Shown here piece after piece: positions 14,235 through 36,965 of a DNA stretch of 64,000 nucleotides. The stretch is from assembly GCF_964204865.1 (NCBI RefSeq), contig NC_135256.1, forward strand, positions 6,696,001 through 6,760,000, written 5' to 3'. The translations under genes were made by a program, and so were the position numbers. Each line of letters opens with the position of its first letter. Positions within the stretch are counted from its first letter, which is position 1. The DNA is from Styela clava. Lineage: Eukaryota. Below the pieces are notes generated by a model that saw only the letters and a list, made by a program, of their open reading frames with translations, was not told where the DNA came from and searched no databases.

Positions 14235-15179
14235 ATGGATGGTGAATATGAATTAATCAAACAAATTAGCTATCTCTGTGTGAATTCGATATCGACGGTT
14301 TTTCTTCTCTACATCACTATCTGTCAAATAGTCATCTTTATCAGGAAACGTTTGTACAGAAAAAGACTTCGAAGCGTAAAGGAAGTTTTAAAACCTTCAA
14401 ATATACCTCTCGTTATGAATGCCATTCTCATCATTTCAGGGATCTTTGGTATTTCGTTGAGTGCTTGTCTGAGTGCGGTGAATGTTAGTAAAGTGATTTA
14501 TTGGAAATGTTTCGTCAAATTCAAAAAAGATTATATGGAGAATGAAACGGAAATTTCTGTCATTAAAAAATGTTTTGTCAATTATGGTGATCATATGACT
14601 AAGTTATTTTCAGCCGGTCAGTTTTTCTACATGTTCTTGATAACATTCATATACATGTTGCTGTGGTTACGACAAACGATGTTCAACACGGAGCCAACTT
14701 TAAAACGACTTTCATCAAAATATTTGAACATTTTCAGTTATTTTCAAGGATGTTTCATTATATTATCCGGCGTGATACTGGGGATATCATGGATGTACTA
14801 TCTGCGTTATGCCGATCCTTTTACATTTATCTTTCTCAGCATTCAGCTCGAGATACAGATTGCCGTCCTCATTCTCTTTTTAGTTCCGTTAATCAAACAC
14901 CAACGAAGCCTGAAATTTCTTTATCAAAATCCAAAACCTCCTGATCGTCTCATACGACTGATGAAACGTTCTACTGCAGCAACGATTGTTGCTATGGTAA
15001 CAGACATAGCAACAATCGTAGTGTTCCAAATAGCTTCCGAATATTTGATGTCGATTAATGCTCTCCTAAATATGTGTTGCGTTATATTCTGCTTCGCCGA
15101 TTGGAGAGAAAAGTTCATTCCATGTCTTGTATTATGCACAAATGATAAAGCGGAAGCCGAACAAGTTGATGCAAAATAA
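14235..15179 (+). CDS. Orphan 7TM (GPCR-like) membrane protein, subfamily A copy 1 (~314 aa), single coding exon
   Basis: Long ORF (track starts at GTG 14181; first ATG 14235 aligns with paralog starts). Seven hydrophobic segments, basic loops after TM1/TM3/TM5. Clear paralogy to 18952-19956 and 26343-27353. Confidence 0.85.
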   Translation: MDGEYELIKQISYLCVNSISTVFLLYITICQIVIFIRKRLYRKRLRSVKEVLKPSNIPLVMNAILIISGIFGISLSACLSAVNVSKVIYWKCFVKFKKDYMENETEISVIKKCFVNYGDHMTKLFSAGQFFYMFLITFIYMLLWLRQTMFNTEPTLKRLSSKYLNIFSYFQGCFIILSGVILGISWMYYLRYADPFTFIFLSIQLEIQIAVLILFLVPLIKHQRSLKFLYQNPKPPDRLIRLMKRSTAATIVAMVTDIATIVVFQIASEYLMSINALLNMCCVIFCFADWREKFIPCLVLCTNDKAEAEQVDAK

Positions 15180-16461
15180 ACGAGAAGATGCAAAATAAAC
15201 TGTATATATACCAACAATTTTTTCGGGACTCGATGGTTGAAGTGTAATGTCGCACCAGTTAAGATGTATTTTACTTAAAGCCGTTTTCACAAGTTAACGC
15301 CTAAATTATATTAATTTGGGTGATCGTTACCAACCTTGAAATATTCGTACCTGTCAGACTCATGGAAGCTCCAAATTCAGGTGGACTTTTCACGACAGGA
15401 CTTTTCAAGGAATTACGATGTAAAACAAAAATATCTTCTGCTATTTGTTATTTATTCATTCACACAATTTATTTCTGAATATTGAAGCGATTAGTTTTTT
15501 TTTATCTAAGTTATATATCGTTTTGCTAAATATTTGTTGGAAACGGAGTGGTCCATATATAAAACGTTTTGCTAAATTCGGGCTGTTGTCGAATAAACTT
15601 TCTCCGAAACTAATAGATTAATTGATGTTCAATTTTAGCATTTAATTGTTGAAGCCGCTAGAAGCCTATTATTATTTTTATTTTTAAAAAAGTACACGTT
15701 TCGTGTTTAATTCTATTTATCGTGACGGCCTTCTTCACAATTTGCTTGTATTGGTTGTTGAGAGTAAGGACGCCCGTTTTAATGTTCCCTTCCCGGACTC
15801 CTTTCATTTGTTCAGAGTTTGTCGATGTTTTAAATGAAAATACAGTGGCCGATCTTTACTAGTTTCGCCGAAATCCGGCCTAAGTTTTACGCGTGATCAG
15901 TGGAAGATATTTCAGTACTATGACGGTTAATTTCCTGACTAAGGCCAAAAAATGTTCATACCAGAAACTAAAATAAACACGTAAAATCGTGACACAGTTG
16001 ATTGCATTGTAATGTAGGCGCAATGATAACCGTGTTCATTTTCGAAAACTAGAATTACCGTACAGAATGAAAACTTTGGAATCTTAGACAGGTTTCCTGC
16101 GTCAAGGTGTCATTGTTAGCAAGTTTTATGACTTTTATGCCATTGAAAATGGCGAAACAGGTTATTGTATGTGATTAGCATTTGTCGAGTTATAAAACGT
16201 ATCAGGACAATCCACGCCGATGATTTACTAAACAATAAAAAGGCGAAAGAGGTAAATCTAGAGCTCAGTATTCCAAAAACATATTGATTTACTCTAAATC
16301 GTCCCGACTGGATTCGAAACAGAGAACAGGAATGAAATCGTATTATTATAACGCCCAGCGGATGCAGTATATAATATCTAACTCCATGGTTTTCAACTTT
16401 CTTACCCTGGGGGACAGGTACGCGGACGGTAACAAATATTGAAATACATAAAACACAATAT

Positions 16462-17570
16462 AAGCCGTTAGACGCCCAGCATGGATCTCCGCCGATGCTT
16501 GAGGCTACAGGAACTGCCAGTTAATTTTGAGCGCTGTGCGTCTTGCCGGTATTCTTGCTCGAACGATATGCTGCGGATAATATTTAAAACATGATCACTA
16601 AAATTCCCAAGGCTTGCCCAGTTCATCGACTATCGACATGAAAGACGGTTTGTTCGGACGCGTATTCTCATCCGCGGAAGATAGTTATTTCGGAATTTTA
16701 ATATTCGACTTAGTGAAGTAGAAAATGGCAAAATATCATGGGAAAACTGGGAAAAATTTTAAGGATTGGCGCGTTTTTTAGCTGCTATCATGGAAGTAAA
16801 ATATCAGTCCTGAATTTGGGTAACAACGCATAGTATTAGGAAGACAGGATAACCCACGTGAGAAATTTCATTCAGATCTGTGCAACCGTTTGGACGCTAC
16901 AGCTGGACAAACAGACAGACAGACATACAAGCTTCATTACTTTATAACTATTACAAGCCGGTAGGCGTCCAGGATCTTCGCTTAAAGTGAGGCTCGCACT
17001 CAAGCAACCGGTTGCCATCAATAGAAATTTGAGGATCTCTAACGGGGCGCGATTCGGTGAGTGAGCGGGTTGGCAAATAGGTAAGTTCATTTAAACCCTG
17101 CGCCTTTCGTAGACATACTCGCGTGACTGATATACGGTACCTAAAAATTGAAAAAAAAATAACGTTCGCAAAAATCCCTAAGGCTTCCCCAGTTTATGGA
17201 GTATTGAGACAAATGACAATTTGTTGAACAGAGTATTTTCCCGTGCGGAAGGTAGCAATCTTGGAATTTCAATTTTCAACTTGGTTGGCGTGAAAACGGC
17301 GATAAGTTGTGGAATTTTCTAATGATCGGCGCATTTTCGCTGTTGTCATGAAAACCAATTTTTCAATCCGGACTCCCGATAAAACGCACACTCCTAGGTT
17401 AATAGAAGAGCCCACATGAGGAATTTCTCATAGATAGGCCCAGCCGTTTAGACGCTACAGATCGACACACAGACAGACAGACAGACAGAACGACCGATAA
17501 TAAGGATCTCCTGAAGCGGAGATCCAACAGAGCGACTGAGAACAGGCTCTCCTATAGCGGAGATCCAATA
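16462..17570 (+). mobile_element. Two tandem Helentron-associated (HINE/DINE-1-like) units
   Basis: Units ~16462-16950 and ~16955-17525 share AAGCCG.TAG.CG.CCAG starts, AAAAT.CC.AAGGCTT.CCCAGTT and CCGTTT.GACGCTACAG..(CAGA)n; terminal hairpin GGATCTCC-TGAAGC-GGAGATCC at 17504-17525 with a degenerate copy after it. Confidence 0.65.
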
Positions 17571-17601
17571 ACCTGTGTTCGAGTAATATACTTCAACATA
17601 C

Positions 17602-17603
<2 letters not shown>

Positions 17604-17635
<32 letters not shown>
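17604..17635. repeat. (CA)n microsatellite
   Basis: About 16 CA units. Confidence 0.95.
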
Positions 17636-17639
<4 letters not shown>

Positions 17640-18951
17640 TTCCAAACAATTCAATCCAACAGTCAATTAGACTCAAATTTACACTTTTACCTCCACGTGG
17701 ACGACAAACACAGAGTGCAGCAACAAATGTGGAACAAATAATATTCTTATCCGTTGGGTATTTTGAAATTTGACGCACATAGCAGAGCAATTTAGGAATG
17801 AAATACAACACATTTCAAATTTTTGCTTTTTGTTGTTGTCTAAATACGATAAAACTCATGTAACTGATGCGGAATTAAACAAGTCTTTGCATATTCTCAG
17901 ATTTTTAAGTTGGAGATTAAATAATGAATTTACAAAACTCTTTTGCGACATATTTAGAAAAGTTTAATTGCTCGTCGGTCAAGACGAGTAATTCGTTGGG
18001 CAATCAACACCATATTTTTCAAATATGTCAAACAACAACGGAAACAAAATTGTTTAATAAAACACAACGTAACTTCGTCTTTTCGGTAACAAGTCGGTTA
18101 CATCAGCGAAAAACTGCACCGATCCGCGGAACAGCCGTTGGGAACCGCTGCTCTAGGTATTATTCTAGGTCAAGCTGTATCTTTTCGCTTTAGCCAAGCC
18201 CTTTGCTGTTTTCATGGCGCAATGAACTTATTTTAGTAAAGTCGGGGTCTGTAAAGAAATCATTAGCCTAACTGACAATTGAGAAGCGCCTGGATTTTTT
18301 GTGTTAGCTTTATTTAATTAGTCAAAAACAAAAACGTTTTGTACAGCGAGAAAAGATATTTCGAAAACTATAGATAATATATTTTCTAGATCAGAAGAAA
18401 ATACGTAGTAATTGTTTCCCGAGGTTACAGCATCCTCACTCTGAGCTTGTTAGTTGCAGCATAACGTAGTCACCACCGTGCTGTGCTACGAGCAAAACAG
18501 AATATTTCAATCTATTCTAGAATACATAAATCGAATCCAGAATTTTTATTTTCTTGATGATCTAGTGATTTAAATAGCTGTCGCTAATACTAGTATTGAA
18601 AAGATCAATATTTCTAAACCAACATTTCGCCAATAATTGAGCACGAAAATTAATGTCCCATTGTTGCCCCCTTTGCAGCGTTGTAGAAAGATAGCAACTG
18701 GTTTAGAGTGGTGACTCAATTAATCTTTTACAACTCTACAAGCCCCAGATATTTATTGATATATGTATTCATAACAGATTTTTCCGTGAAATCCTGAGTG
18801 TTTTGAACTTGAATGGGAATATTTGTTTAAACTTTTTGTTTTGTCTTTTGACAGAAAATCAGAAATCGCATACTTTGAGGAAATCAACTTTTAATAACAT
18901 ATCACTATACAAATTGAAATCAACTGCGAATGAAGATTTTGTTAATTTAAC

Positions 18952-19956
18952 ATGGCCGAGAAAAATGAACTAAACATAGAAATTGGGTATCTTTGTGCGA
19001 ATTCGATATCGACGGTATTGCTTCTCTACATCACTATCTGTCAAATGATCATCTTTATCAGAAAACGTTTGTACAAGACAAGAATTCGAAGCGTAAAAGA
19101 TGTCTTGAAGCCTTCAAATATACAACTCCCCATGAATGTTACGCTCGTCGTTTCAGGGATCTTTGGTATTTCATTGAGTGCTTGCTTGACTGCGGTGAAT
19201 ATCGATAAAGTGACTTTCTATAATTGTTTTATGAAACTCCATAAAGATGAAATGGACATTGAAATGCAAATTTCTAGCGGGTTGGAACTAAATAGTGAAT
19301 TCGAAAAATGTCATGACCGCACTGACTTGTCCAAGTTATATTTAACCGCACATCTATTGTACACGTGCTTGATAACATCTGTCTACATGGTTCTGTGGTT
19401 TCGACAAACGATGTTTAATACGGAGCCAACTTTAAAGCGACTTTCGTCTAAATATTTAAGAATCTTCAGTTATTTCCAAGGATGCTTTATTATAATAACA
19501 GGCCTGTTAATGGGAATAATATGGATATACCATCTAGCAAATATGGACTACTATGAAGATTTAGGAATCCTCACTTACGTCTTTTTGAGCATTCAGCTTG
19601 AGATACAGATTGCAATCCTCATTCTCTTTTTAGTTCCGTTAATAAAGCACCAACGACGCCAAAAATTTCTACATCAAAATCAAAAACCTCCTGATCGTCT
19701 CATACGACTGATGAAACGTTGCACTGCAGCAACAATTGTTGCTATGGTAACAGACATAGCAACAATCGTAGTATTTCAAATCGCGTTTGAATATTTGATG
19801 TCGATTAATGCTTTTATAAATATATGTTGCGTCCTATTCTGCTATGCCGACTGGAGAGAAAAATTCTTTCCATGTCTTGTATTATGTAAAAATGATAAAG
19901 CGAAAGCCGAACAAGTTACCCCGGGCAATGATAATAGACGTGAAAATGCAATTTAA
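18952..19956 (+). CDS. Orphan 7TM (GPCR-like) membrane protein, subfamily A copy 2 (334 aa)
   Basis: Intact ATG-TAA ORF with seven hydrophobic segments; shares WxRQTMFNTEPTLKRLSSKYL, LFLVPLIKH and CxADWREKFxPC with its paralogs. Confidence 0.87.
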   Translation: MAEKNELNIEIGYLCANSISTVLLLYITICQMIIFIRKRLYKTRIRSVKDVLKPSNIQLPMNVTLVVSGIFGISLSACLTAVNIDKVTFYNCFMKLHKDEMDIEMQISSGLELNSEFEKCHDRTDLSKLYLTAHLLYTCLITSVYMVLWFRQTMFNTEPTLKRLSSKYLRIFSYFQGCFIIITGLLMGIIWIYHLANMDYYEDLGILTYVFLSIQLEIQIAILILFLVPLIKHQRRQKFLHQNQKPPDRLIRLMKRCTAATIVAMVTDIATIVVFQIAFEYLMSINAFINICCVLFCYADWREKFFPCLVLCKNDKAKAEQVTPGNDNRRENAI

Positions 19957-20935
19957 GCCAAAACAGTATTTATTGTTGGGGTTTTGTTGTTAAAGCCTCA
20001 AGCCTGAAATTAATGACATCTCAGTTCAGAGATATCTTGTTCATACCCGTTATCACAATTCGTCTAAGTCAACATTTCCCAAGCAGGGAGAAATCCCTCC
20101 CCAGTGAAGACTGATATATAGAAATTACTCTGTATTCAATGTCATTTTGCTGATTTTGTTATTTTTATTGTTTTCCAGTATGACTGTTAACTTAATAATA
20201 CATGTTTATGCTCATATGATAAGCTGTTCAAACTATGCAGAATTTGGAGTGCTCATAACACTAGCTAGGGATTGAACAATGAGGGGAAAACAAAGTTCTA
20301 TGCATATAGTGAGGGAGGAACAAAGATATCCAACATAGGCACAGGGAGAAATTCTGATAATATATCTTAACCAAAATTGCTAAATTCTTACGTCCCATAT
20401 TTATAACCAACTTCAATGGAGATGCTCGTCCATCCCTGTTCAGTACAAATGTACCAACTGGTGCAGATATTAGAAATGGCCCATGATCATCATACCAGTC
20501 ATTTTCTCCAACGATTATCTCTGTTTGAGACGAAATTTCATTTCTTCACTCTAATAAGTCACCGTACTTCAATATTTTTGGTGAACCATGAGTAAGCATC
20601 AGTCTGTGAGGTAAACAAAGCTTTACTGCCATTTCCGCCGAGCGATGGCAGCCCTATGGTGTGTACTGTGTAGTCATTAGATACTCGCTATTCATTCGGA
20701 TATTGATTCATCAACTTAGTTCGATGATTACATCGAAATTGGTGAGAACCTATGTGTACCAGAATATAAGAGAGTAGAGGTACATACAAGAATATTTGCT
20801 TTGTCAACTCCATAAACAGTCATCGTAATATTAATAACGTATAAGTAATAAATTATTCTGGTATGGAAATGGGAGAGTGATATAGGGCCAGTGCTTTAAG
20901 GCGTTGGAATGTCGGCTTATTTTTAGACTTTAGAT

Positions 20936-21208
20936 CAAGGGTGGGCAAGGTTTTAGGACCAGGGGCCAACAATTTTGCCTAACTAGACTGGCGGGTCATG
21001 TAAGTGTGACGTAAAAAGTTACATTACAGGAACAATATTTACAGTGTTACAAAAGCAAAAGTGGAAAACAATAAGCTTCGTGCAATAACTAAATTTAATC
21101 CCAATCCCATCGAATAAAATAACAAAATTCGGTTTCAGTTTGGGAGCATCAGGCTGCATTACCCAACGGGCCAGATTTGACCATCCGGCCGTAGTCTGCC
21201 CCTGTCAG
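20936..21208. mobile_element. hAT MITE (family shared with 40260-40547)
   Basis: Perfect TSD CTTTAGAT; internal CATGTAAGTGTGACGTAAAA.GTTACA shared with the second copy. Confidence 0.85.
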
Positions 21209-22293
21209 CTTTAGATGATTGAAGCAAATGGGTAACGTGGACCGCATTTTTACATACATACATATATTTTCTTAAATGACGGAACCTGTCGTTGGTACGT
21301 TCAATACAGAAGAGAACCCGTTCTTAAAATTCCCATCACTAGATACAACCATACGGTCATTAGAGTTCACACTCACTTTATTCACTATTTCAAATCACTG
21401 AATGAAAACAAAATGCATTCTAGAATCTAGAATCCACATTTATTATTACTTGTGAAATACGCTCGCAGTAATCAGATTTGAAAGCTCTATTAAATTTGGA
21501 AGTTGGGATCCTCCAATAGCAACTACCACGTATGTGGCCTGCTTCAGCCCGGCCTGATTGCTCTAATTGTCTAATTTCCTATTGCTAATTAATAATTACT
21601 GAACCAATTGCTTTAAAATTTGATTGGTGGAAGATTCTTGTTGTCGCAAGAATGCTATTATTTTTGTGAATCTTTGAGATTCGTTTTTCACTCTGAAGTT
21701 TTGTGTAACGTCATCAAAATAAGATATTGCCCAACGCGTTAGGCGATCGTTATTCATGGATCTGATGGTCAGCGAATTTAGGTAACTATTAACCATGCAT
21801 TACGATATTTCATATTGGCAATTGATTGATTTTAGCACTGGGTATGGCCTCAAATAAAAGTTCATTCTCTAAATAATATTGCAACAAACTATAAGCAATC
21901 AAATTATATCAGATATTTGTTTGGTGCGAAGATATGAAAACATCGTATAAAAACCATGACCCTGACAATCACCATTTTTGTACTGAACAAGAATGGACAA
22001 GCATATCTCGCGTAGTTGCTTATAATTGTGATTTGTGGGACGTACGAGTTCATTAAGTTAGGTCAGTGGTTTTCAACCCTTTTTATGTCACGGCACACTA
22101 TTGAGCTATTTAAATATTTGCGGCACACCTATCACAAAACAGGAACATTTTCTACTCTTGAAGCCATTTAGCTATAAAATAATAAAAAACATAGAAGATC
22201 AGATAAGGGAAATTCTATTATTGTTAATATAACATATTCTGTATTAAAAATGGATGGTTAATAGTTACCGATATTATAACTGTTTCCTTAGAA

Positions 22294-23412
22294 CAGGGGT
22301 GGCCAACCTTTCACATACCATGCGCCACGTTTTAAACAAAATGTTTCAGATGCGCCGTAAATCTCTTGTATTCCCACGCCTAATGTCCGCTTCTTGTTGA
22401 AATTATATAAATTTATAATACACACACATATATACACACGTATATGTAGTTTTTACAATTTACAACTTCACATGAATAGAAATTAAGCAAGGAAGTATAA
22501 TAAATAAAACTGATCAATTTTATTTAAGTACCGCCTTTATGAGACTTTTGCTGCTGTTTTACTTTCGCCGGTTTTTTTATTCTTGGAGTTAAGTTTGTTA
22601 CTGAGAGGAGCAGTGCATTCTTCAAATTTAAATCTGTAAGTCCTGACCTCGCTTTGCTTTTAATTAGTTCCATGGCAGAAAATGTTTGTTCACATCTATA
22701 TGTCGTTCCGAAACGACATATAAAACCCTGGGCAAATTTTCTCAGTTCTTTAGTATCAATATCTCCTCTACTCTACTCTACCCTCGATTCTAATTGGCCT
22801 TTGCTAATCAGCTGTTTGGCCCAGCGTCGCGTGATTTTACTCCAGGCTTCTTCGAGATTAGTACTTGCGTCACAGCAAGCGATTTTACGCTTCGCTTTTG
22901 TTGACAACGGTCATTTGAAGTTTGGATGAAAAAGGTGGAATTTAGGGGTCATTTTCAGCATGTTGTGGGTTGATTCATAAGAAATTTTTTAGGCTTGGGC
23001 AATTCAACTGGTTGTTCAATGGTTATTGGGAGATATTTGGGAAGTCTGGGCAATGGAAAATCCATGTTTCAAGCTGATAAATGACGATTTTCTATTTTCT
23101 TTTCACTTCAGTAGGAAAAAAATAGTAAATTTTACTAATTTTTGCTAAAAGTCTAGAATGAATGTCGTAAAGTCCGTCCAAAAGCTAACGTCAATAATCG
23201 CCTGCTGTTTCTAATTCCAACAAGCCGTAAGTGGAGAATAGATTTTAGGTACAATCAAAAGTCACCATGTAAATCGCAAAAAAACGGCTTGGCGTGGAGA
23301 AGCCAAGTGCAAATAACAATTTTGGCATGAAAAGGGTGAAGGATGCAATGCGCCACCTCTAATCATGCAATGCGCCACGTTTGGCGCATGCGCCATAAGT
23401 TGGCCACCCCTG
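22294..23412 (-). mobile_element. Nested hAT (Buster/SPIN) deletion derivative retaining the transposase C-terminal dimerisation region
   Basis: TIRs CAGGGGTGGCCAAC / GTTGGCCACCCCTG; perfect TSD CCTTAGAA; minus strand ~22750-22615 reads ELRKFAQGFICRFGTTYRCEQTFSAMELIKSKARSGLTD. Confidence 0.9.
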
Positions 23413-26342: not shown

Positions 26343-27353
26343 TTAAAGTCTAGTGTCATTGCCCGGGGTAACTTGTTTGGCTTCCGCTTTATCATTTTTG
26401 CATAATGTAAGACATGGAATGAACTTTTCTCTCCAATCGGCGTAGCAAAAAATAATGCAACATATATTTATAAGAGCATTAATCGACATCAAATATTCGG
26501 AAGCGATTTGAAATACTACGATTGTTGCTATGTCCGTTACCATAGCAACAATTGTTGCTGCAGTGCAACGTTTCATCAGTCGTATGAGATGATCAGGAGG
26601 TTTTTGATTTTGATGAAGAAATTTTAGACTTCGTTGGTGCTTGATTAACGGAACTAAAAAGAGAATGAGGACTGCAATCTGTATTTCAAGCTGAGTACTC
26701 AGCAAGATTAAAGCGAGCGTATGTTTAAAACCATAAATATCTCCAGTATAACGATAGTACCATAATATTGTCAAAACGACGCTGGATAATATGATGAAGC
26801 ATCCTTGAAAATAACTGAAAATTTTCAAATATTTAGAAGAAAGTCGTTTTAAAGTTGGCTCCGTAATAAACAACGTTTGTCGTAACCACAGCAGCATGTA
26901 GACAGATGTTATCAAGCACATGTAGAAGAATTGTGCGGCCAAGTATAACTTGGGCAAGTTAGTTTGACCAAAGCAATTTTCAAATCCACTATATAGTTCT
27001 AACTCTCCAAAATCTTCTATTTCAATGTTCATTTTATCTTCATTGATTATTTCCAAACAATTAGTATAAGTCAATTTACCAATATTTACGGCAGTCAAAC
27101 AAGCACTGAATGTAATACCAAATATGTCAGATAAGAGAATTGCAACATCCATAAGAAATTGTATATTTGAAGGCTTCAAGACATCCTTTACGTTTCGAAT
27201 TCTTGTTCTGTATAAACGTTTCCTGATAAAGATGACCATTTGACAGATAGTGATGTAGAGAAGCAATGCAGTCGATATCAAATTCACACAGAGGTAGCTA
27301 ATATCTGTATTCAATACATAGTCAGGGTCAATGTAATTGCTGTTATAATCCAT
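26343..27353 (-). CDS. Orphan 7TM (GPCR-like) membrane protein, subfamily A copy 3 (336 aa)
   Basis: Intact ORF; inverted paralog of copy 2, including ~500 bp of homologous 3' flank. Confidence 0.87.
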   Translation of the reverse strand: MDYNSNYIDPDYVLNTDISYLCVNLISTALLLYITICQMVIFIRKRLYRTRIRNVKDVLKPSNIQFLMDVAILLSDIFGITFSACLTAVNIGKLTYTNCLEIINEDKMNIEIEDFGELELYSGFENCFGQTNLPKLYLAAQFFYMCLITSVYMLLWLRQTLFITEPTLKRLSSKYLKIFSYFQGCFIILSSVVLTILWYYRYTGDIYGFKHTLALILLSTQLEIQIAVLILFLVPLIKHQRSLKFLHQNQKPPDHLIRLMKRCTAATIVAMVTDIATIVVFQIASEYLMSINALINICCIIFCYADWREKFIPCLTLCKNDKAEAKQVTPGNDTRL

Positions 27354-27561: not shown

Positions 27562-27798
27562 AGGCGCTCCAGTAATATGTGAACCAATATGGCGAACACC
27601 GGAACGTAGTATGAGTACCAGGTTAGGGTTAGGACATAGTTTTATTCCAATTGTCGTCATTTTAGTTCTATTACGAGTTCGAGGACTAGCCGAGTGACTT
27701 CAGTAGTATTTGTACATGAAATTACGGCCTAACTTTAACTAGGTACACATACTACGTTCCGGTGTCCGCCATCTTGGTTCACATACCTCTGGAGTACC
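27562..27798. mobile_element. Family P MITE copy ~210 bp upstream of 7TM-A3
   Basis: Same arms and core. Confidence 0.8.
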
Positions 27799-29967
27799 AG
27801 TAAAAGAGTGGCAGGATAAGTGATGCAAAATCCTCATTATTCAAATATGGCTGGGTGTGCGGGACTTCGTTCAGAGTGAAATGTAGAAACATGAAAAATC
27901 TAGAGCCATGCGAGCTATATATAATTTTTTCATTGTGATTTCTGCGATATCTAATGACATGAGGTTTGTAACAAATCAAGTCAAATGTATGATCCATATT
28001 TCCATTTCCATTTTGAGGTGTTCATTTTTGGAAAGGGGACATGACATTGTCACCATTGATATTTTATTCATATAAGTCTTTTTAGAATCAAAGCACTTTG
28101 CAAAGTTTCCTATTTTAGGTGCTCCAGAAGTGTAGAACCAGAGAAGTGTGTACCAATACGGAATTTACTTGGCTAATACAGATAGTCCCCAAACTCGTAA
28201 TAGAACTAAAATAAGGAAAATTGAAATAAAATTATGGCCTGACTCTAACCTGGTAGACACACTACGGAAGAACCCTTTTCTTAATAGCTTATTTACAGTG
28301 CAAAAAAACAGTATTTCATGCGGCTAACTAAACAAAACCCAACAGACTGGTCTACACTAGACTCAATTAGACGACTATCAACTGTCATTTTAATATTTAG
28401 AAGGTAAATAAAATGGTTAAAGCTTTTTTAACTTAATGCATTATTAGGGAAAGAAGTAAATAAACTCCATGCCTATGTAATATTTTTATTGAGCCATAGT
28501 AAATTCTACTTCTACTATTCTATCCTAACAAGAAAACACAAAACAAAAATTCCTTACTATATTGGTAATTATATTACTCAGCAGGTGTAGTGCGTCTAAT
28601 CAATAAACGGAAATGACGCTGTTAAAAATTTCAACTTCTGGGTTGATCAAAAAATCGAATATAAACGTGATCAGATGTTTGGTCTTTTACAGGGCCGGTT
28701 CATGCCTTTCAGGGACCCTGATCACTTGAGAATCTGGTACCCTATACAGAAAAGTAATTTTAATTAACGTGAATCCAGTGTTCCATGTGATCTGAAATTA
28801 AACAAAAGAGTCATGCTCAAATACATGGACACGAAGACTAAAGCGAAAGAGTAGTCTACGTTACCTTTTAATGCATCGGTACCGCCAAAACACTTCCTTG
28901 TTTTACGTAGCACGATTATATTGTGTCTTCCGAGGAGCTGCAGTTCCGTTGCAATAAACACTTAAAAAATCATAAAACTTTTTGCAATAGTGAAGTATGG
29001 GAGAATATTTCTGTTAAACTGTTAACAATAGCTGTAAATACTTGGTAATTATTTCTACTTGATGGTGATATATAGTTTCGACATATTGATTAGCAGAAAT
29101 TGACCTTCCGTAGTTTAAAGTCATATGGTAAAATGCCGGTATTTTCTACGTTTATTTTAAATTTCACATTTGCAGTTTTCCCATAACGCTTCCTGAATGT
29201 AACACAGTGCTCAAGGGTGTCAATAGATCTATTGAAAAATCTCTGAGTCAGAAGTTTGCATTCCGTTGTTCTTGTCAATCGATCAACTGAATGGTACGAC
29301 AACGTTATACTAACTTGAAAAGACGTATCAGTGCTTTGAGGATATTTTCCAGAAAACTATACCAAATATGGGCATGATGAAAAAAGTGTCGTTGTGATCG
29401 TTGTTGAAGCAGAAATCGATAGCAAAAGACATACATTGTTTATTAGTATTTTTAAGAAGAGTAAACATTTATTTTGTCTACGAGAAGGAGCCTGTAGACT
29501 AGTTGCTTTTTTTTACTGACTCGGCCTATTTTACAAATTTTACGGAAAATGGTCAATGAGATTTAGATAATGCATAAGGTCGATACATGCACTTGGAAAC
29601 ATTGGAAATATTTTTTATAATTGTTAACTTGGTATGAAATTCACAACAATAATTAAAATCAATTTCCTGATTTTTTGCAAAGATGGCCCTAACATTTTGC
29701 CGAATGTTCTACGATAAACGATCGATACAACGTTATCCGCACAAGGGACAGAAGCCGGTTCAAATTGCAAATTATTTAAATAACATATATGAAAAAGCCT
29801 AACTCGACAAATATATTGTTTGCATAACATCCGTGGTGCAAAATAAATATAAGTATAAACGCTCCTTTTTATGCAAAATGTCGGTGCACTCATTTTAACC
29901 TATTTTTGTTTTTAAAAAGCATTATAACTAAATTTTCATTGCTTTAACGTTCCGGAGTTTCTATAAT

Positions 29968-30981
29968 ATGTGGTTTCTACAAAAAAGCTAAAATGTTTCG
30001 GCCAATGATACCGATTCATTTTACAGCAAAAACGAAGTATTTAGAGTATGGCTGTTTGCTGTGATTTTTGCATCCTTCACGTTTCTCTTAAACTTCTATG
30101 TCTTGGTCGTTACTTTGATTTATGAATGGAAAGTACAAAAGGTAAACAGAGAAATCATGAACCGAATTTGTCAGGAGAATCGATATTCAAGAATGAAAAA
30201 CATATAGCTAGTGACGTCATGAGATACTTAATCATAACGTTTCTGATTTTGTTCGTTGCTGTCGGATGCCTTGATGCTGTTGAATTACGTTATTTTTATG
30301 ACAATGAAGTGGATCTGTGCAGAATCCTACGATATGTGAAGCATCTTTTAGTGGCCATTTGTCTTTTTATACCGTATCTGATTTACTGGATGCGTCAGAG
30401 ACAATTTTACAGATGCAACAAATTTATGCGAACATTGAGTTGGCTAGTATTAGCTTTCATCATCATTGGTGTGCTTCTTACGGGTTTAATTATAATTCTT
30501 ATTCGTGGCAAATACAGCAATACCTTACTAGGTTGCTCATCTGAAAAGAGATATACGATCCCCATTGTGCTTTTGCAATCAGCATTTGCATATATTGCTA
30601 TGGCAATTTTCCAATTTTCTTCACTTTTTCTCTTTGTTTATCCTTTATGGAAATTAAGAAAAAATCATAATTCATAATGCGAGTTCCAGAAAATTAATGA
30701 AACGAATTAAACGTTGTTCAATTGCTACAGCTGTATCGATCTTTGTAATGACGATTGGTCCTTCAATTTCTTCTATATACAATTCGTACTTTCACCTGTT
30801 AATTTTTGATTCGCTTGTATTGGAATTCGTAGTCCTAGTTGCTACTATCTGTGTCATAGCTTCCTTCGATGAATGGAAACTTAGGCTGTTTCCGTTTGCT
30901 CATCACGTAACATTTGTTCAAGCTACAATCACAGATTGGCCTCACAGTCATTCTTATCATAATACTACTATTTTCGGATGA
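29968..30981 (+). pseudogene. Pseudogene of orphan 7TM subfamily B
   Basis: Colinear with intact 34122-35144 but has TAA at codon 8 (29989-29991), a 1-bp deletion near 30196, a 21-bp in-frame deletion after RQFY, and a TCATAAT duplication giving stop/frameshift near 30670. ORF-track pieces 30126-30677 and 30697-30981 are its fragments. Confidence 0.88.
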
Positions 30982-32228
30982 ATACATAAAATACTAATTG
31001 TCTGCCTTACCCTGTGATGCAAATAGGAAAATCTATTATCCGATTTTTTCTAACTTTTTGCACAATTGCATTGTGTCTATTATACTCATTAAATTAAAAC
31101 AGCGGTTCTCGTGACTATTTTGAAATTACTATTTTACTTTGCTTTACTTAGCTAAAAACTACAAACAGCGAAAAAATAAGTCTCACGCGAATGCTCATTT
31201 AATTACTCATATATTGTTTTACATGCTGTATGCTTATATAGTAAAATTAGGTATCATTTATATTCATCCTTTTGACAATATACTATTCATTAATTTTCAT
31301 ATTTATATTGATTCGCTTTCATTCTTTATTACACTCTGTTGTAGTTTATAATATGTAGGTTTATCATGTACTTATTATTTATCGCTATCTTTATTCGTTG
31401 TGTTTTTGATTTTTCCAAGACTAAGAATTTAATTCATCAAACTACGCGTGTGTAAAGCAGTGATTCTTTGAATTTGACTTATCTATTTTAAAACTTTTAT
31501 TGCCCTTTTTCCAGGTCGCAATTCCGATTTTGTTTAGTGCAAGTAGTTTAAAATGTGTGCGAAAATAAGCATTATACTACCAACAATAATAATAATATAA
31601 ATAAAGAATATCAGTAACCCTGTTAGGAAAGGTGGTTGTAGAGTTTAGTCCAACGTGGTTTAGAATTGATAATAATAATAAATAATAATATAAATGAAGA
31701 ATATTAGTAATATAATAGCAATTACAAAGTAAAATTTTCTTCCAAAAATGACAAAATTTTTTTCGGGAAAGGTGGGTGTAAAGTTTCCTCGATACATAAT
31801 TTGACATAGACAGCGACAAACTATGAGACAAACTATGGGTCGCGACCCACTGGTGGCCGGTGGGTCGCAAAAGGAATCGTAGTGGGTCGTGAAAAGATGT
31901 AGAAATCTTTGGTTAGTTATACTGGTTATTAGGATTGGTGGCAAGTGGCAACTCGAATGCGTAAATCTTCAAAAAAAAAAAAAAATTAAATTGAATTTAA
32001 ATTCTAATCTGTGAAAGTTTCCTTTTTACGATCTTATCAAAGGAACAAAAATTTGCTACTCAAAGAATAACCATGTGGTTTTTTTTACGCATAGCAGTTT
32101 GGAACACTGTACAGCACATATTACCGTGTTTACATATTTTTGTTTGATAATATTTGTCTAAATCATGTTGAGTATATAATGCGTTTCAAAGTATTCAAAA
32201 AAAAATTCTCAGAGCATTAAATTCTGTC

Positions 32229-32570
32229 ATGGGGTTGGTATTGCTGGTGGGATACACTTCAGTTCAGCTCGATCGGCATTATCTTTTGAAAAACCATTTC
32301 CATGATGTTGGTGAGGCCGTCTTCATTTACTCAAGAGTGACCAAAAATAAATATTTGGAAGATTTTATTGCTACGTCAGTCAGTCAATTGAGCAGTAACG
32401 CTTCTTTCGTACGTTGCAATGACAATAGGGAGCACTTCAGCAAATTTACTATAACGCTTCCTGATTGTGACGCAGTGCTCAAGGGTGTCAATGGATGTAT
32501 TAAAAAATTCTGACTCTGGAGTTTGCATTCCATTGTTCTTGTCAATTGAACGGCAACGTTATATAAGGTA
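32229..32570 (+). pseudogene. Possible decayed small secreted-protein gene repeated in each subfamily B duplication unit
   Basis: 94-aa ORF with hydrophobic start; homologous broken copies at ~29165-29370 and 37292-37475 conserve peptide blocks with several third-position changes. Confidence 0.35.
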
Positions 32571-33184
32571 ATTGGTGGAAAGGTGGTAGCATATATATCA
32601 GTACTTTCATGAAATCTATACCGAATGTGGGATAACGTCAGAAATTTTTTGCTTGTCGCTAAATCGGACAGGGCCGAAAGTGTTTATCAGAATATTTGTA
32701 AAATGAGAAAACTTATATTTTGTCCACGAAAATGAGAATGAGGAATTTTACCGAATTTAATCCAGGAGTTTTAGATGAAGTTGAAAGTAGACACATGCCC
32801 TTGAAAACGTAGAAGAAAATTTCTCATAATGCATGCCTATTGGTAAGAAAGTAAATATGGACTTGTTGTTGTTTGTTTGTTGTTGGGGAGGAAAAAGCTT
32901 TCGAATTCGAAGTTGTCGAATTAGAACTATACTCAGAACCATAACGAGACAATTCTTAACTTTCAACTCCAACGTACGATACGACAATCAACTAGTGAAC
33001 AATGGCCATAGTTTATGTACTAAAAACTAAATAATAATACATAAAAATGTCTTAATTACGCGTGGAACTGGGATAAATATTACTAGAACTAGGTATTAGT
33101 TGTGAAATAGTTCGGGACTATTTAACTCGATTATGTCCAGTAAAAAACAAGTTATGACGATTTATAATTTAGAATAGTCTATAT

Positions 33185-33850
33185 CAAGGGTGGCAAACAT
33201 CAACCGGTAGCGTGCCACGTCTCAAGTAGTCGATCGCGTCTGATGTTGAGTGAATTTATAAAATGTCCCAAAAATTACCTTGACCAGTTTCATGCATCGC
33301 AATGTGTTTCAAATCAGGAAAAATACAGTACTGTATACGCGCAAAATACGTCATACACATACAATATTTGAGTTTGGGCAAACCTGATAGATCATATTTT
33401 TACGAAACAAATAAAAGGTTCAGCCAAGGTTTAGAAATGAAACTGCAGAATATCGAATGTCTGGACTGACAAACGATCCCACAAAAACATCTGCAATACG
33501 GGGAAGTTATTGTCTCACTCCAAGAGTAGTGTGATAAATTGTATTCGCAATGGTAGCACTGACATCAAAATGCCGTATTATTTCTAATTCCAAGCGAGCG
33601 AAGGAAGAGTCGGACTTGGAGTGAATTGTAAATTAGATACTGAAGTTTGAGCAGTAATGTAACATTGATGGTTCGAGAATATTTATATTTTCCTGTTTAG
33701 ATAATATGGATACTTGGCAAGGTTTTCAGAGGAATTTTCAACACTTACGACTAAAAATTAGACAGGACTTAGATCTGAATTGTATGATTCGAATAAATCT
33801 TAACTAAATGAGGAAAATTTACTCTGCTTTAAGCAGCTTTGCCACCCCTG
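33185..33850. mobile_element. hAT MITE upstream of the intact subfamily B gene
   Basis: CAAGGGTGGCAAA / TTTGCCACCCCTG; flanks GTCTATAT / ATCTATAT. Confidence 0.8.
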
Positions 33851-34121
33851 ATCTATATATTAACTTGTTTGACTCCGTTTAATATTATTAATTTCAAAAA
33901 CAACAGTAAAATCTTACTAAAATAACAAAATTATCCCCATATACAATCATATGAAATCACAATATTCATTATATATATATAAAACAAAAATCTTTATATG
34001 CATGGTTTTCTGAGGCTAAAATTCGATGTACTTTCAATGTACTAATGGCAATGCACTAATTTCAACCTATTTGTTGTTTTTAAAAACAATTACTAATAAA
34101 ATTTCTAATAGTTTCTACAAG

Positions 34122-35144
34122 ATGTGGTTTCTACAAATAAGTCAAAATATTTCGGCCAATGATACCATTTCATTCTATAAAGACGAAGTATATAGACAAT
34201 GGCTGGCGGCTGTAGTTTTTGCATCTTTTACATTTTTCATAAACTTCTACGTCTTGGTCGTAACTTTGATTTATGAATGGAAAGTACAAAAAGAAAACAG
34301 GGAAATCATGAACCGAATTCGTCAGGAGAATCGATATTCAAGAATGAGAAAACATATAGCTAGTGACGTCATGAGATACTTAATCATTACGTTTCTGATT
34401 TTGTTCGTTGCTGTGGGATGTCTTGATGCTGTTGAATTACGTTATTCTTATGACCATGAAGTGGATATATGCAGAAACCTGCGATATGTGAAGCATTTTT
34501 TAGTCGCTATTTGTCTTCTTATACCGTATCTGATTTACTGGTTGCGTCAGAGACAATTTTACAAGTCAGATTTACTGAAGCCAATATGCAACAAATTTAT
34601 GCAAGTATTGAGTTGGCTCGTCTTAGCTTTTATGATCATTGGTTTGGTTACGGGTTTACTCATAATGATTTTTCGTGGCGAATATAGCAATACTTCAATA
34701 GGTTGCTCATCTGAAAAGGAAGATCCCACCCCCCTACTGCTGTTGCAAACAGCATCTGCGTATATTGCTTTGATAATTTTTCAATTTTCTTTACTTTTTC
34801 TTTTTGTTTATCCATTATGGAAATTAAGAAAAAATCATAATGCAAATGCCAGAAGATTAATGAAACAAATTAAACGGTCTTCGATCGCTACAACAATAAC
34901 ATTCTTTGCAATGATGGTTGGTCCTATAGTTTCTTTTATATACAATTCGTACTTTCACTTGATAATTTTTGATTCGCTTGTACTGGAATTCGTAATCCTA
35001 GTTGCTACTATCTGTGTCATAGCTTCCTTTGATGAATGGAAACTGAGGTTGTTTCCCTTTGCTCATCACGTCACATTAGTTCAAGCTACAATCACAGATA
35101 GGCCTCACAGTCATTCTTATCATAATACTACTATTTTCGGATGA
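34122..35144 (+). CDS. Orphan 7TM (GPCR-like) membrane protein, subfamily B, intact (~340 aa)
   Basis: ORF opens at 34026, but the ATG at 34122 (MWFLQ) matches the start of the pseudogene paralog. N-terminal sequons NIS/NDT, seven hydrophobic segments, Cys at top of TM3 (DICRN) and in loop TM4-5 (GCSS), motifs YWLRQ, LFVYPLWK, FDEWKLRLFP. Confidence 0.87.
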   Translation: MWFLQISQNISANDTISFYKDEVYRQWLAAVVFASFTFFINFYVLVVTLIYEWKVQKENREIMNRIRQENRYSRMRKHIASDVMRYLIITFLILFVAVGCLDAVELRYSYDHEVDICRNLRYVKHFLVAICLLIPYLIYWLRQRQFYKSDLLKPICNKFMQVLSWLVLAFMIIGLVTGLLIMIFRGEYSNTSIGCSSEKEDPTPLLLLQTASAYIALIIFQFSLLFLFVYPLWKLRKNHNANARRLMKQIKRSSIATTITFFAMMVGPIVSFIYNSYFHLIIFDSLVLEFVILVATICVIASFDEWKLRLFPFAHHVTLVQATITDRPHSHSYHNTTIFG

Positions 35145-35925
35145 ATACAAAGAAAATTATTTGTATCTGAGATTGCCTCCCGTTTTGATGTTCATGGGAA
35201 AAGAATTATGATAATTATCATGTTATTTTCCGTTTTTTAACTTTGCGCACAATTTACGTGAAAATATCACTGTCTTTTTCTCAAGAAATTTCCTTGAAAA
35301 ATGTTCCCCGACCTGGGTTGAAATTACGAATTTTGCTCTGCTGTAATCAACCATAAACTAGCCTACAATGATTGAAAAAATAGGTCTACACATAGAATGC
35401 ACATTTATTCACTCAAATACATATTGTTTTATATGTTGTACTTATATAGTGAAATAAACATCATTTATTTTCATCTTTTCGACAATATGCTATTGTAAAA
35501 TGTTTTGTATTCGCTTTTATGCTTTATTACACATTGTTGTATTTATCGTTATCTTTATTCGTCGTATTTTTACTTTTTCTAAGACTAAAAATTTTATTCA
35601 CCAAACTGAAACCATTATTGGGTCATATGTAAAAAGACGACGTGTAGTTAAAGCAGCGATTCTTTGAATTCTGTCCTTCGCCTATTATAAAACTCTTTAT
35701 TGTCTCTTCAATATACATAAACAATATGTTGTTAATTCAGTCTTCCATGGACCATTATCCAATGGTGTTCGCAAGTCGCACCCCGCTTTATAATGTGCGC
35801 GTAAATAAGTATAATATTAACAACAATATTAATAATATAAATGGAGAATATCAGTAATATAATAGCAATTGCAAAGCAAAATTTTCTTCCACAGAAGATT
35901 ATAGAGGAAACTCTCTGTCTTTCCA

Positions 35926-36965
35926 CAGAAGATTAATGAAACGAATTAAACGGTCTTCGATCGCTACAACAATAACATTCTTTGCAATGATGGTTGGTCC
36001 TATAATTTCTATTATATACAATTCGTACTTTCACTTGATAATTTTTGATTCGCTTGTACTGGAATTTGTAATCCTAGTTGCTACTATCTGTGTCATAGCT
36101 TCCTTTGATGAATGGAAACTTAGGTTGTTTCCCTTTGCTCATCACGTAACATTAGTTCAAGCTACAGTCACAGATAGGCCTCACAGTCATTCTTATCATA
36201 ATACTACTATTTTCGGATGAATACAAAGAAAATTATTTGTATCTGAGATTGCCTCCCGTTTTGATGTTCATGGGAAAAGAATTATGATATTTATCATGTT
36301 ATTTTCCGTTTTTTAACTTTGCGCACAATTTTCGTGAAAATATCACTGTCTTTTTCTCAAGAAATTTCCTTGAAAAAGGTTCCCCGACCTGGGTTGAAAT
36401 TACGAATTTTGCTCTGCTGTAATCAACCATAAACTAGCCTACAATGATTGAAAAAATAAGTCTGCACATAGAATGCACATTTAATCACTCAAATACATAT
36501 TGTTTTATATGTTGTACTTATATAGTGAAATAAACATCATTTATTTTCATCTTTTCGACAATATGCTATTGTAAAATGTTTTGTATTCGCGTTTATGCTT
36601 TATTACACATTGTTGTATTTATCGTTATCTTTATTCGTCGTATTTTTACTTTTTCTAACACTAAAAATTTTATTCACCAAACTGAAACCATTATTGGGTC
36701 ATATGTAAAAAGACGATGTGTAGTTAAAGAAGCGATTCTTTGAATTCTGTCCTTCGCCCATTATAAAACTCTTTATTGTCTCTTCAATATACATAAACAA
36801 TACTTTGTTAATTCAGTCTTCCATGGACCATTATCTAATGGTGTTCGCAAGTCGCACCCCGCTTTATAATGTGTGCGTAAATAAGTATAATATTAACAAC
36901 AATATTAATAATATAAATGGAGAATATCAGTAATATGATAGCAATTACAAAGCAAAATTTTCTTC
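35926..36965 (+). pseudogene. Recent ~1.08-kb tandem duplicate of the 3' end (TM6-TM7 plus 3' flank) of the subfamily B gene; 94-aa ORF 35936-36220
   Basis: Near-identical to 34850-35889 with an offset of 1076 bp; the 5' two-thirds of the gene is missing. Confidence 0.85.

What the first reader, a model, noticed from the sequence alone, without database searches (positions are those of the whole stretch)
14235..36220. Cluster of an orphan, intron-less 7TM receptor-like family with its own motif set: candidate lineage-specific chemosensory or immune receptor system
Seen: six loci (4 intact, 1 pseudogene, 1 partial) in 22 kb. Subfamilies A and B are very divergent but align motif for motif: end of TM3 LWLRQ / YWLRQ, TM5 LFLVPLIK / LFVYPLWK, pre-TM6 LMKRCTAAT / QIKRSSIAT, post-TM7 CVIFCFADWREKFIP / CVIASFDEWKLRLFP. 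Loops after TM1, TM3 and TM5 are basic (positive-inside rule gives N-out/C-in), and subfamily B has N-terminal sequons plus a TM3/ECL2 Cys pair. There is no DRY, CWxP or NPxxY. Established: single-exon, clustered, birth-and-death 7TM genes are the hallmark of chemoreceptor repertoires, and ascidian genomes are reported to lack vertebrate-type olfactory receptors. Inference: this may be an unnamed receptor repertoire in which WxRQ occupies the DRY position.
Basis: partly seen in the sequence, partly recalled or inferred. Interest (0 to 1): 0.82.

Follow-up and report, generated by a model that had tools for sequence, protein, structure and literature searches.

The report
Unnamed sea-squirt GPCR-like receptor family
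This stretch of the sea squirt Styela clava genome holds four intact genes and two broken copies of a very large, undescribed family of seven-helix membrane receptors that is so far named only from sea squirts. The family is a reasonable but untested candidate for the smell or taste receptors these animals have seemed to lack.

Summary
The window (Styela clava, contig C8) holds six loci of one family:
- three intact subfamily-A genes;
- one intact subfamily-B gene;
- one frameshifted B pseudogene;
- one B 3' fragment.

All quoted motifs are present.

**What it is**
- No member reaches the threshold of any Pfam family, and none matches a solved structure by sequence.
- AlphaFold2 models are confident (pLDDT 87-89, pTM 0.84-0.86). 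They are seven-helix bundles with helix 8 after TM7, and an ECL2 hairpin in the B model.
- Foldseek and an unbiased VIA search of 48,161 chains return almost only GPCR-fold proteins. The GPCR class is not resolved.
- The family keeps a few class A landmarks. The TM3-top Cys lies exactly 25 residues before the invariant Arg of W-x-R-Q (189/189). An ECL2 Cys and a TM7 Asn 11 residues before a helix-8 aromatic are also kept.
- It lacks D2.50, CWxP and NPxxY.

**Size and range**
- 438 first-look candidates in this genome.
- 1404 clusters (at 50% identity) in public data.
- Named members come from Styela, Ciona and Clavelina, all annotated "uncharacterized".

**Evolution**
- The cytoplasmic face is conserved and the extracellular face varies.
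- dN/dS is about 0.3 inside and 0.4-1.3 outside.

A chemosensory function is plausible but untested. The scan had already met this family on other pieces of the same genome (s1-819807 and others).

The parts
14235..15179 (+). Subfamily A gene 1: intact, single exon, 314 aa, motif LWLRQ. The mechanical ORF starts at a GTG at 14181; the first ATG is at 14235.
   Evidence: It is 70% identical to the other two A genes. RNA(?) contigs lie at 14146-14792.
14480..14620 (+). Hypervariable, Cys-bracketed first extracellular loop (ECL1) of A gene 1. Across A-type paralogues this loop is 16-42 residues long, usually carries 2 or 4 Cys, and often has N-glycosylation sequons.
   Evidence: ECL1 entropy is 1.82 bits against 0.47-0.74 bits for the cytoplasmic loops.
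18952..19956 (+). Subfamily A gene 2: intact, 334 aa. It is annotated at NCBI as uncharacterized protein LOC120328584. The WFRQ motif is at 19396-19407.
   Evidence: AF2 model: pLDDT 88.6, pTM 0.86, seven helices plus helix 8. The top 50 Foldseek hits are almost all class A GPCRs. Contigs from three runs tile 18854-20000 without joints.
26343..27353 (-). Subfamily A gene 3: intact, 336 aa, on the opposite strand.
   Evidence: Within the A trio dN/dS is 0.36-0.41 and dS about 0.45.
29956..30978 (+). Subfamily B pseudogene. It reads in three pieces in frames 3, 2, 3, with breaks near 30198 and within 30583-30674. The pieces are 68-80% identical to the intact B gene.
34026..35144 (+). Subfamily B gene: intact. 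The ORF is 372 aa. The probable true start is the ATG at 34122, which gives 340 aa like the paralogues and is followed by sequons NIS and NDT. The WLRQ motif is at 34539-34550. The TM3-top Cys is C149 and the ECL2 Cys is C227.
   Evidence: AF2 model: pLDDT 86.7, pTM 0.84. The top 50 Foldseek hits are all class A GPCRs with probability 1.0.
35903..36217 (+). Partial tandem copy of the B gene's 3' third (residues 268-372, from pre-TM6 to the stop), 90% identical, about 760 bp downstream of the intact gene.

Best explanation
The cluster belongs to a very large family of highly derived, rhodopsin-like (GPCR-fold) seven-helix cell-surface receptors. So far the family is named only from ascidians.

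**Shown**
- The genes are single-exon and arranged in tandem arrays that gain and lose copies.
- The proteins have the N-terminus outside.
- Most members have the canonical TM3-ECL2 cysteine pair. A-type members instead carry a Cys-rich, glycosylated, hypervariable ECL1.
- Every member has a near-invariant cytoplasmic surface: W-x-R-Q at the end of TM3, Q...LF..P in TM5, K/R-R before TM6, and F-x-D-W...P at the TM7/helix 8 junction.

**Inferred mechanism**
- The variable outer half binds many different ligands.
- The conserved inner face, centred on the Arg at the DRY position, engages one common partner, most likely a heterotrimeric G protein or arrestin-like adaptor.
- The repertoire therefore works like a chemoreceptor family, sensing waterborne, food, settlement or conspecific cues.

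Ligand, coupling partner and expressing cells are all inferred, none shown.
For: **Fold**
- AF2 pLDDT is 86.7 and 88.6, pTM 0.84 and 0.86. Both models have 7 TM helices and helix 8; the B model also has an ECL2 hairpin.
- The top 50 Foldseek hits against the PDB are class A GPCRs for both models.

**Landmarks**
- The TM3 Cys is present in 83% of members and the ECL2 Cys in 86%; both are present in 187 of 227.
- The Cys-to-Arg spacing is 25 in 189 of 189 members. The TM7 Asn-to-Trp spacing is 11 in 172 of 173.
- W is 98%, R 95% (otherwise K), Q 95% and P 99% conserved over 227 members.

**Topology**
- 169 of 227 members have a sequon N-terminal of TM1.
- K+R density is 0.219 inside against 0.095 outside.

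**Repertoire-like evolution**
- The profile finds 438 first-look candidates in this genome. Only 116 were scored, and all 117 resulting matches had E <= 1e-15.
- There are tandem arrays on C16, C17, C13, C1, C9 and C8, with scattered pseudogenes.
- 1404 clusters at 50% identity exist in public data.
- Among A paralogues the extracellular TM halves have entropy 1.56 bits against 0.74 bits for the cytoplasmic halves (p = 2.6e-10).
- dN/dS is 0.4-1.3 outside against 0.22-0.44 inside.

**Context**
- Reviews state that tunicates lack OR, TAAR, V1R and V2R genes and insect- or nematode-type chemoreceptor genes, and that their receptors are unknown (PMC7776563, PMC2396169, PMC12922724).
Against: - No sequence-level link to any GPCR family reaches threshold. 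Only 2 of 118 members touch 7tm_1 (best E 1.1e-4), and Sre and Srd get one weak hit each.
- Most class A microswitches are absent (N1.50, D2.50, W4.50, P5.50, CWxP, NPxxY), so G-protein coupling cannot be assumed.
- Expression evidence is thin. It consists of low-depth contigs from runs only guessed to be RNA, with tissue unknown.
- Nothing ties any member to a sensory cell or a ligand.
- The taxonomic range outside ascidians could not be searched.
Confidence: 0.55

Rival explanations
1. The family is a diversified GPCR-type receptor family, but not for external chemicals. It would serve immunity or self/non-self recognition (for example on haemocytes, or in gamete or colony recognition), or it would bind rapidly evolving endogenous peptides.
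For: The same features fit this reading: a variable outside, a conserved inside, and birth-and-death arrays. Foldseek ranks chemokine, opioid, formyl-peptide and S1P receptors first. B-type members have a peptide-receptor-like ECL2 hairpin. Ascidians have many lineage-specific peptides (PMC6475428).
Against: The Foldseek ranking among class A subfamilies is weak (E 1e-3 to 0.2, TM-score 0.4-0.58). There are no expression data for haemocytes or gonad. Several hundred copies are more than known peptide systems need.
Confidence: 0.25
2. The proteins have the 7TM fold but are not G-protein-coupled receptors. They could be channels, transporter or scramblase-like proteins, trafficking proteins, or ligand-gated proteins of another kind that share only the ancient seven-helix bundle.
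Against: The Cys3.25-like and Arg3.50-like pair sits at exact class A spacing, with an ECL2 Cys and helix 8. There is no TM7 Lys for retinal. An N-out topology with glycosylated, hypervariable outer loops and a huge copy number is typical of receptors, not of housekeeping 7TM proteins.
Confidence: 0.12
3. The ORFs are not functional host genes. They would be decaying copies or cargo of a repeat.
For: There are many copies, some with stops or frameshifts.
Against: Most copies are intact ORFs of 300-400 aa in AT-rich DNA. dN/dS is below 1 and much lower on the cytoplasmic face. The family is conserved across three ascidian orders, has NCBI gene models, and contigs concentrate on the genes. No transposase or reverse-transcriptase domain was found.
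Confidence: 0.02

Closest known systems
Class A (rhodopsin-like) GPCRs, Pfam 7tm_1 PF00001
   Same: Seven-helix bundle with the N-terminus outside. TM3-top Cys paired with an ECL2 Cys. A near-invariant Arg 25 residues after that Cys (the DRY-Arg position). ECL2 beta-hairpin in B-type members. A TM7 Asn 11 residues before a helix-8 aromatic. Class A GPCRs are the top Foldseek hits for both models.
   Different: No HMM match at threshold. W-x-R-Q replaces E/DRY. N1.50, D2.50, W4.50, P5.50, CWxP and NPxxY are absent. ICL1 is long, basic and conserved. There is a family-specific TM5 Q...LF..P motif and an F-x-D-W...P motif at the TM7/helix 8 junction. A-type members swap the ECL2 Cys for a Cys-rich ECL1.
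Vertebrate bitter taste receptors TAS2R (class T, PF05296)
Lineage-specific chemoreceptor expansions, such as nematode serpentine receptors (Sre, Srd, Srg) and sea-urchin, amphioxus and mollusc rhodopsin-type expansions
   Same: Hundreds of mostly single-exon paralogues in tandem clusters, birth-and-death evolution, a variable ligand side and a conserved signalling side.
   Different: Only single weak hits to Sre (7e-4) and Srd (3e-3) among 118 members. The deuterostome expansions described so far are recognisable as 7tm_1; this family is not.
Ciona 'Other/Unclassified Rhodopsins' of Kamesh et al. 2008 (PMC2396169)
   Same: Ascidian-specific, fast-evolving 7TM genes without vertebrate orthologues.
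   Different: Those were found with GPCR HMMs or BLAST, so they resemble known families. The present family has no such match, and its Ciona members are annotated only as 'uncharacterized'. Whether any overlap exists could not be checked.

Membership tests
Class A GPCR (Pfam 7tm_1, PF00001) | Match to the family HMM above the curated cut-off | tested here: not met
   There is no hit for the five window proteins or for 45 Styela paralogues. Only 2 of 118 family representatives hit weakly (best E 1.1e-4). A PF00001 scan of the genome gives 56 matches, none at the family loci I compared.
Class A GPCR (Pfam 7tm_1, PF00001) | Seven-helix GPCR fold with extracellular N-terminus and helix 8 | tested here: met
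   AF2 models. Foldseek and VIA hits. Sequons and the positive-inside rule.
Class A GPCR (Pfam 7tm_1, PF00001) | Conserved disulfide pair: Cys at the top of TM3 (3.25) and Cys in ECL2 | tested here: met
   C149 is present in 83% and C227 in 86% of members; both are present in 187 of 227. A-type members (about 12%) lack the ECL2 Cys and have 2 or 4 Cys in ECL1 instead. The disulfide itself is inferred.
Class A GPCR (Pfam 7tm_1, PF00001) | E/DRY motif with Arg3.50 at the cytoplasmic end of TM3 | tested here: inconclusive
   Arg is 95% conserved (otherwise Lys) and lies exactly 25 residues after the TM3 Cys in 189 of 189 members, as in class A. However, the acidic residue and the Tyr are replaced (W-x-R-Q). 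No residue-level structural superposition was available.
Class A GPCR (Pfam 7tm_1, PF00001) | Microswitch residues N1.50, D2.50, W4.50, P5.50, CWxP6.50 and NPxxY7.53 | tested here: not met
   The family consensus and near-invariant columns show none of them. Only a TM7 Asn (81%) with an aromatic at +11 recalls NPxxY...F.
Class A GPCR (Pfam 7tm_1, PF00001) | Ligand-dependent coupling to heterotrimeric G proteins | not testable with these tools
   This needs a heterologous signalling assay.
TAS2R bitter taste receptors (class T, PF05296) | HMM match and TAS2R signature motifs | tested here: not met
Nematode serpentine chemoreceptors (Sre PF03125, Srd PF10317, Srg PF02118) | HMM match above cut-off | tested here: not met
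   One member of 118 hits Sre at E 7e-4 and one hits Srd at E 3e-3. No Srg hit is listed. An automatic Atlas cluster name 'Serpentine receptor class gamma' is only a label.
Microbial rhodopsins / opsins | Retinal-binding Lys in TM7 | tested here: not met
Insect-type 7TM ion-channel chemoreceptors (OR/GR, 7TMIC) | Inverted topology (N-terminus inside) and the 7TMIC fold | tested here: not met
   N-terminal sequons occur in 169 of 227 members, and basic residues are enriched on the loops after TM1, TM3 and TM5. No OR or GR structure appears among the top 50 matches listed in the PDB searches.
Chemoreceptor repertoire (a functional class, not a homology family) | Large copy number, tandem arrays, pseudogenes, variable ligand side | tested here: met
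Chemoreceptor repertoire (a functional class, not a homology family) | Restricted expression in sensory cells and response to chemical cues | not testable with these tools
   Only low-depth contigs from runs of unknown tissue, guessed to be RNA, were available.

The most novel reading that the evidence does not exclude
This family is the missing ascidian chemoreceptor repertoire. It would be a separate, previously unrecognised branch of the GPCR superfamily, hundreds of genes in Styela and present in all three ascidian orders, that replaced the OR, TAAR, V1R and TAS2R-type receptors tunicates lack. It would signal through a W-x-R-Q / F-x-D-W cytoplasmic interface rather than DRY / NPxxY.
Probability: 0.35. 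Interest if true: 0.85.

Novelty: new variant of a known kind. Interest (0 to 1): 0.66.

Why it matters
[quoted passage not shown] They respond to chemical cues for larval settlement, feeding and taurine chemotaxis. Yet every survey has failed to find vertebrate-, insect- or nematode-type chemoreceptor genes in them, and the receptors are still called unknown (PMC7776563, PMC2396169, PMC12922724).

A family with 438 first-look candidates in this genome, more than the 397 for recognisable class A receptors, would turn that open question into concrete experiments. It has the GPCR fold, a hypervariable outside and an invariant inside. Ciona, the model species, also has members.

Styela clava is an invasive fouling species, so settlement-cue receptors would have applied interest. 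For GPCR biology, a receptor family that keeps only C3.25, R3.50 and helix 8 would be a natural experiment in which activation motifs are dispensable.

Tried and rejected
**Searches that found nothing significant**
- Pfam on the window proteins, on 45 Styela paralogues and on 118 public representatives gave only noise plus a few faint GPCR-clan hits.
- Single-sequence and profile searches of PDB sequences found nothing significant. The profile's weak rhodopsin hits (E 0.03-0.06) are out of register, aligning family TM1/ICL1 with rhodopsin TM5-6, so I discarded them.
- In the ESM Atlas, unnamed chordate clusters score 0.95-0.96. Named clusters reach only 0.82-0.84 (fungal DUF7703, THH1/TOM1/TOM3, GPR137_N). 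These are leads only, and I rejected them as evidence.
- Word-based homologue searches returned 3 and 5 hits and added little.
- A literature search for the LOC identifiers and for any description of the family found nothing.

**Steps that could not be run**
- A profile-profile comparison with a class A alignment built from this genome was planned.
The source organisms of the ENA and Logan members are therefore unknown.
- Complex prediction was not used, because no G-protein sequence was available and the report does not claim binding.

**Explanations rejected**
- A transposon-borne or non-functional ORF is rejected because dN/dS is below 1 and the family is conserved across ascidian orders.
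- A microbial-type rhodopsin is rejected because TM7 has no Lys.
- A 7TMIC receptor is rejected because the topology is N-out.


Full report
**1. Observation**

The window is G000:C8:6696001-6760000 of Styela clava. The 334-aa ORF at 18952-19956 is 100% identical to NCBI's 'uncharacterized protein LOC120328584'.

ORF listing and a tblastn of 59 family ORFs against the window give exactly six loci:
- Three intact A-type genes: 14235-15179(+), 18952-19956(+) and 26343-27353(-).
- A B-type pseudogene at 29956-30978(+). It reads in frames 3/2/3, so it has at least two frameshifts.
- An intact B-type gene at 34026-35144(+).
- A 3' fragment at 35903-36217(+), covering residues 268-372 at 90% identity.

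The B ORF probably starts at the internal ATG at 34122. That gives 340 aa, like its closest paralogues, and is followed by the sequons NIS and NDT. The 32 residues upstream form a low-confidence helix in the model.

Only nine ORFs of 130 aa or more exist in the whole 64 kb of roughly 35% GC DNA, and five of them are these genes. A and B share 27% identity over TM3-TM7 (E 6e-9). The region holds no N stretches.

**2. No curated family fits by sequence**

- Pfam gives nothing for the window proteins or for 45 Styela paralogues.
- Among 118 public representatives there are only scattered weak hits. The GPCR clan appears four times: 7tm_1 twice (best E 1.1e-4), Sre once (7e-4) and Srd once (3e-3). 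All are far below the cut-offs.
- Single sequences and two family profiles find no solved structure by sequence. The weak rhodopsin hits of the larger profile are out of register.
- A PF00001 scan of the genome finds 56 class A matches, none at the family's loci.

**3. The fold is that of a GPCR**

With family alignments, AlphaFold2 gives confident models.

| Feature | B model | A model |
|---|---|---|
| pLDDT / pTM | 86.7 / 0.84 | 88.6 / 0.86 |
| TM1 | 49-~78, running on as a cytoplasmic helix to 100 | 2-37 |
| TM2 | 111-140 | 54-~85, prolonged into ECL1 |
| ECL1 | short | helix at 110-122 |
| TM3 | 146-179 | 126-157 |
| TM4 | 190-216 | 167-196 |
| ECL2 | beta-hairpin 220-229 | short |
| TM5 | 235-267 | 204-239 |
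| TM6 | 273-307 | 248-278 |
| TM7 | 314-333 | 281-296 |
| Helix 8 | 338-342 | 301-305 |

- Foldseek against the PDB returns class A GPCRs in the top 50 for both models. For B these include CCR6, XCR1, opioid, ghrelin and somatostatin receptors (E about 1e-3, probability 1.0, TM-score 0.4-0.58). For A they include S1PR1, EP4, MRGPRD and beta1AR (E 0.02-0.2).

The fold is therefore secure. The GPCR class is not resolved by structure scores.

**4. Landmarks kept and lost**

I aligned 227 members: 59 Styela ORFs plus public representatives. Conservation is as follows.

| Position (B numbering) | Conservation |
|---|---|
| W172 | 98% |
| R174 | 95%, rest K |
| Q175 | 95% |
| Q253 | 95% |
| L259 | 98% |
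| F260 | 90% |
| P263 | 99% |
| K/R283 | 92% |
| R/K284 | 100% |
| TM7 N327 | 81% |
| F335 | 93% |
| W338 | 85% |
| P344 | 85% |
| C149, top of TM3 | 83% |
| C227, ECL2 | 86% |

- The TM3 Cys lies exactly 25 residues before the Arg in 189 of 189 members. The TM7 Asn lies 11 residues before the Trp in 172 of 173.
- From my own knowledge of Ballesteros-Weinstein numbering, these are the spacings of C3.25 to R3.50 (rhodopsin C110/R135) and of N7.49 to F8.50 (rhodopsin N302/F313).
- No equivalents of N1.50, D2.50, W4.50, P5.50, CWxP or the Pro and Tyr of NPxxY are conserved.
- ICL1 is unusually long (20-30 residues), basic and conserved.
- The N-out topology is supported by N-terminal sequons in 169 of 227 members and by K+R density of 0.219 in cytoplasmic loops against 0.095 in extracellular loops.
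- A-type members lack the ECL2 Cys. They carry instead a 16-42-residue ECL1 with 2 or 4 Cys and frequent sequons, highly variable in sequence and length. This agrees with the neighbouring note s1-829513.

**5. Size, range and evolution**

*Copy number in this genome*
- Single-protein searches give at least 150 and at least 113 matches.
- The profile search finds 438 first-look candidates. Only 116 were scored, and all 117 resulting matches had E <= 1e-15.
- The family therefore probably numbers in the hundreds. By the same crude measure it is at least as large as recognisable class A receptors, which give 397 candidates.

*Arrangement*
- Genes lie in tandem arrays, for example about 30 A-type copies at C16:5.75-6.0 Mb, and arrays on C17, C13, C1 and C9. 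Most are intact single ORFs of 300-400 aa, with scattered copies carrying stops.
- Two more B-type copies lie 36-41 kb beyond the window's end.

*Public data*
- The profile finds 1404 clusters at 50% identity, 593 of them at E <= 1e-30.
- Every named member among the 30 I looked up is an 'uncharacterized' or 'unnamed' protein of Styela clava, Ciona intestinalis or Clavelina lepadiformis. These species represent all three traditional ascidian orders.

*Tree*
- In a FastTree of 208 members, A-type is a well-supported clade of 27-34 sequences (support 99). It contains only Styela sequences or sequences of unknown origin. B-type sits in a separate clade of 30 (support 100).
- The Ciona and Clavelina proteins fall in other clades together with Styela genes. 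Old lineages therefore carry recent species-level expansions.

*Selection*
- Among A paralogues the cytoplasmic TM halves and loops are much more conserved than the extracellular ones. Entropy is 0.74 against 1.56 bits (Mann-Whitney p = 2.6e-10). ICLs are 0.47-0.74 bits and ECLs 1.8-2.9 bits.
- Nei-Gojobori estimates on the 25 closest pairs give overall dN/dS of 0.3-0.7, with 0.22-0.44 for the cytoplasmic half and 0.4-1.3 for the extracellular half. dS is 0.03-0.5.
- The window's A trio has dS of about 0.45 and dN/dS of 0.36-0.41.
- These are constrained genes. Their outer face is relaxed or diversifying.

**6. Expression**

No run on record as RNA holds the stretch. Four small runs from one 2020 study are guessed to be RNA and hold part of it.

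Their contigs tile the A gene from 18854 to beyond 20000 in three runs, and they cover parts of 14146-14792 and 15595-15831. Apart from 30-bp repeat matches they leave 16000-18400 empty. There are no joints.

This pattern fits low-level, unspliced transcripts better than random low-coverage DNA. However, the library type is a guess, the depth is about 3, and the tissue is unknown.

**7. Interpretation**

*Shown:* this is a huge family, named so far only from ascidians, of N-out seven-helix proteins with the GPCR fold. The extracellular side is hypervariable and the cytoplasmic side is near-invariant.

*Inferred:* the members are ligand-diversified receptors that all engage one intracellular partner through the W-x-R-Q, K/R-R and F-x-D-W face, most likely a G protein. 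The repertoire would serve chemoreception.

The inference gains weight from the literature. Tunicates lack OR, TAAR, V1R and V2R genes and insect- or nematode-type receptor genes. Only two ordinary class A receptors have been proposed as candidates, and the taurine receptor of larvae is still unknown (PMC7776563, PMC2396169, PMC12922724).

The rivals are:
- receptors for immune, self/non-self or endogenous ligands;
- 7TM proteins that do not couple to G proteins;
- non-functional repeats, which is very unlikely.

I found no paper that describes this family or its LOC identifiers.

**8. Relation to earlier notes of the scan**

The same family was flagged on other pieces of this genome (s1-819807, s1-819909, s1-815980, s1-825945, s1-823139, s1-813409). 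One follow-up (s1-819807) reached essentially the same reading. My results were obtained independently on this window and agree with it.

**9. Limits**

- Genomes of non-ascidian eukaryotes could not be searched, so 'ascidian-only' means 'only seen there'.

Noticed in passing
window 53608-53727 (-): A 40-residue stretch matches (60% identity, E 1e-8) the C-terminal extension (residues 341-380) of a B-type ORF elsewhere on C8 (L037). It is probably a dispersed repeat that was read into that ORF's tail, not a seventh family locus.
   Followed up: no
G000:C8:6796468-6797577 and 6800546-6801544 (36-41 kb beyond the window's end): Two more B-type copies (81% and 69% identical to the window's B gene, one with a stop) extend the cluster beyond the window. 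A- and B-type genes, only about 18% identical, share one neighbourhood.
   Followed up: partly
window 16951-16982, 17261-17290, 17457-17500, 17595-17643, 18512-18543: Short intergenic pieces are matched by parts of longer contigs (up to 881 bases) from the putative RNA runs, or were flagged as repeats by read laying. They are probably dispersed repeats that are transcribed elsewhere.
   Followed up: no
whole genome: By the same crude first-look count, this unnamed family (438 candidates) is at least as numerous in Styela clava as recognisable class A GPCRs (397 candidates, 56 matches at E <= 1e-10).
   Followed up: partly
window 34026-34121: The B ORF's first 32 codons lie upstream of the start used by its paralogues and fold as a low-confidence helix. 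The annotated or real start is probably the ATG at 34122.
   Followed up: partly
window 48357-50464: Another first-reader note (s1-829534) describes a Penelope insertion with hammerhead ribozymes in a BHMT intron. The 248-aa ORF at 49097-49843(-) lies there. I did not examine it.
   Followed up: no
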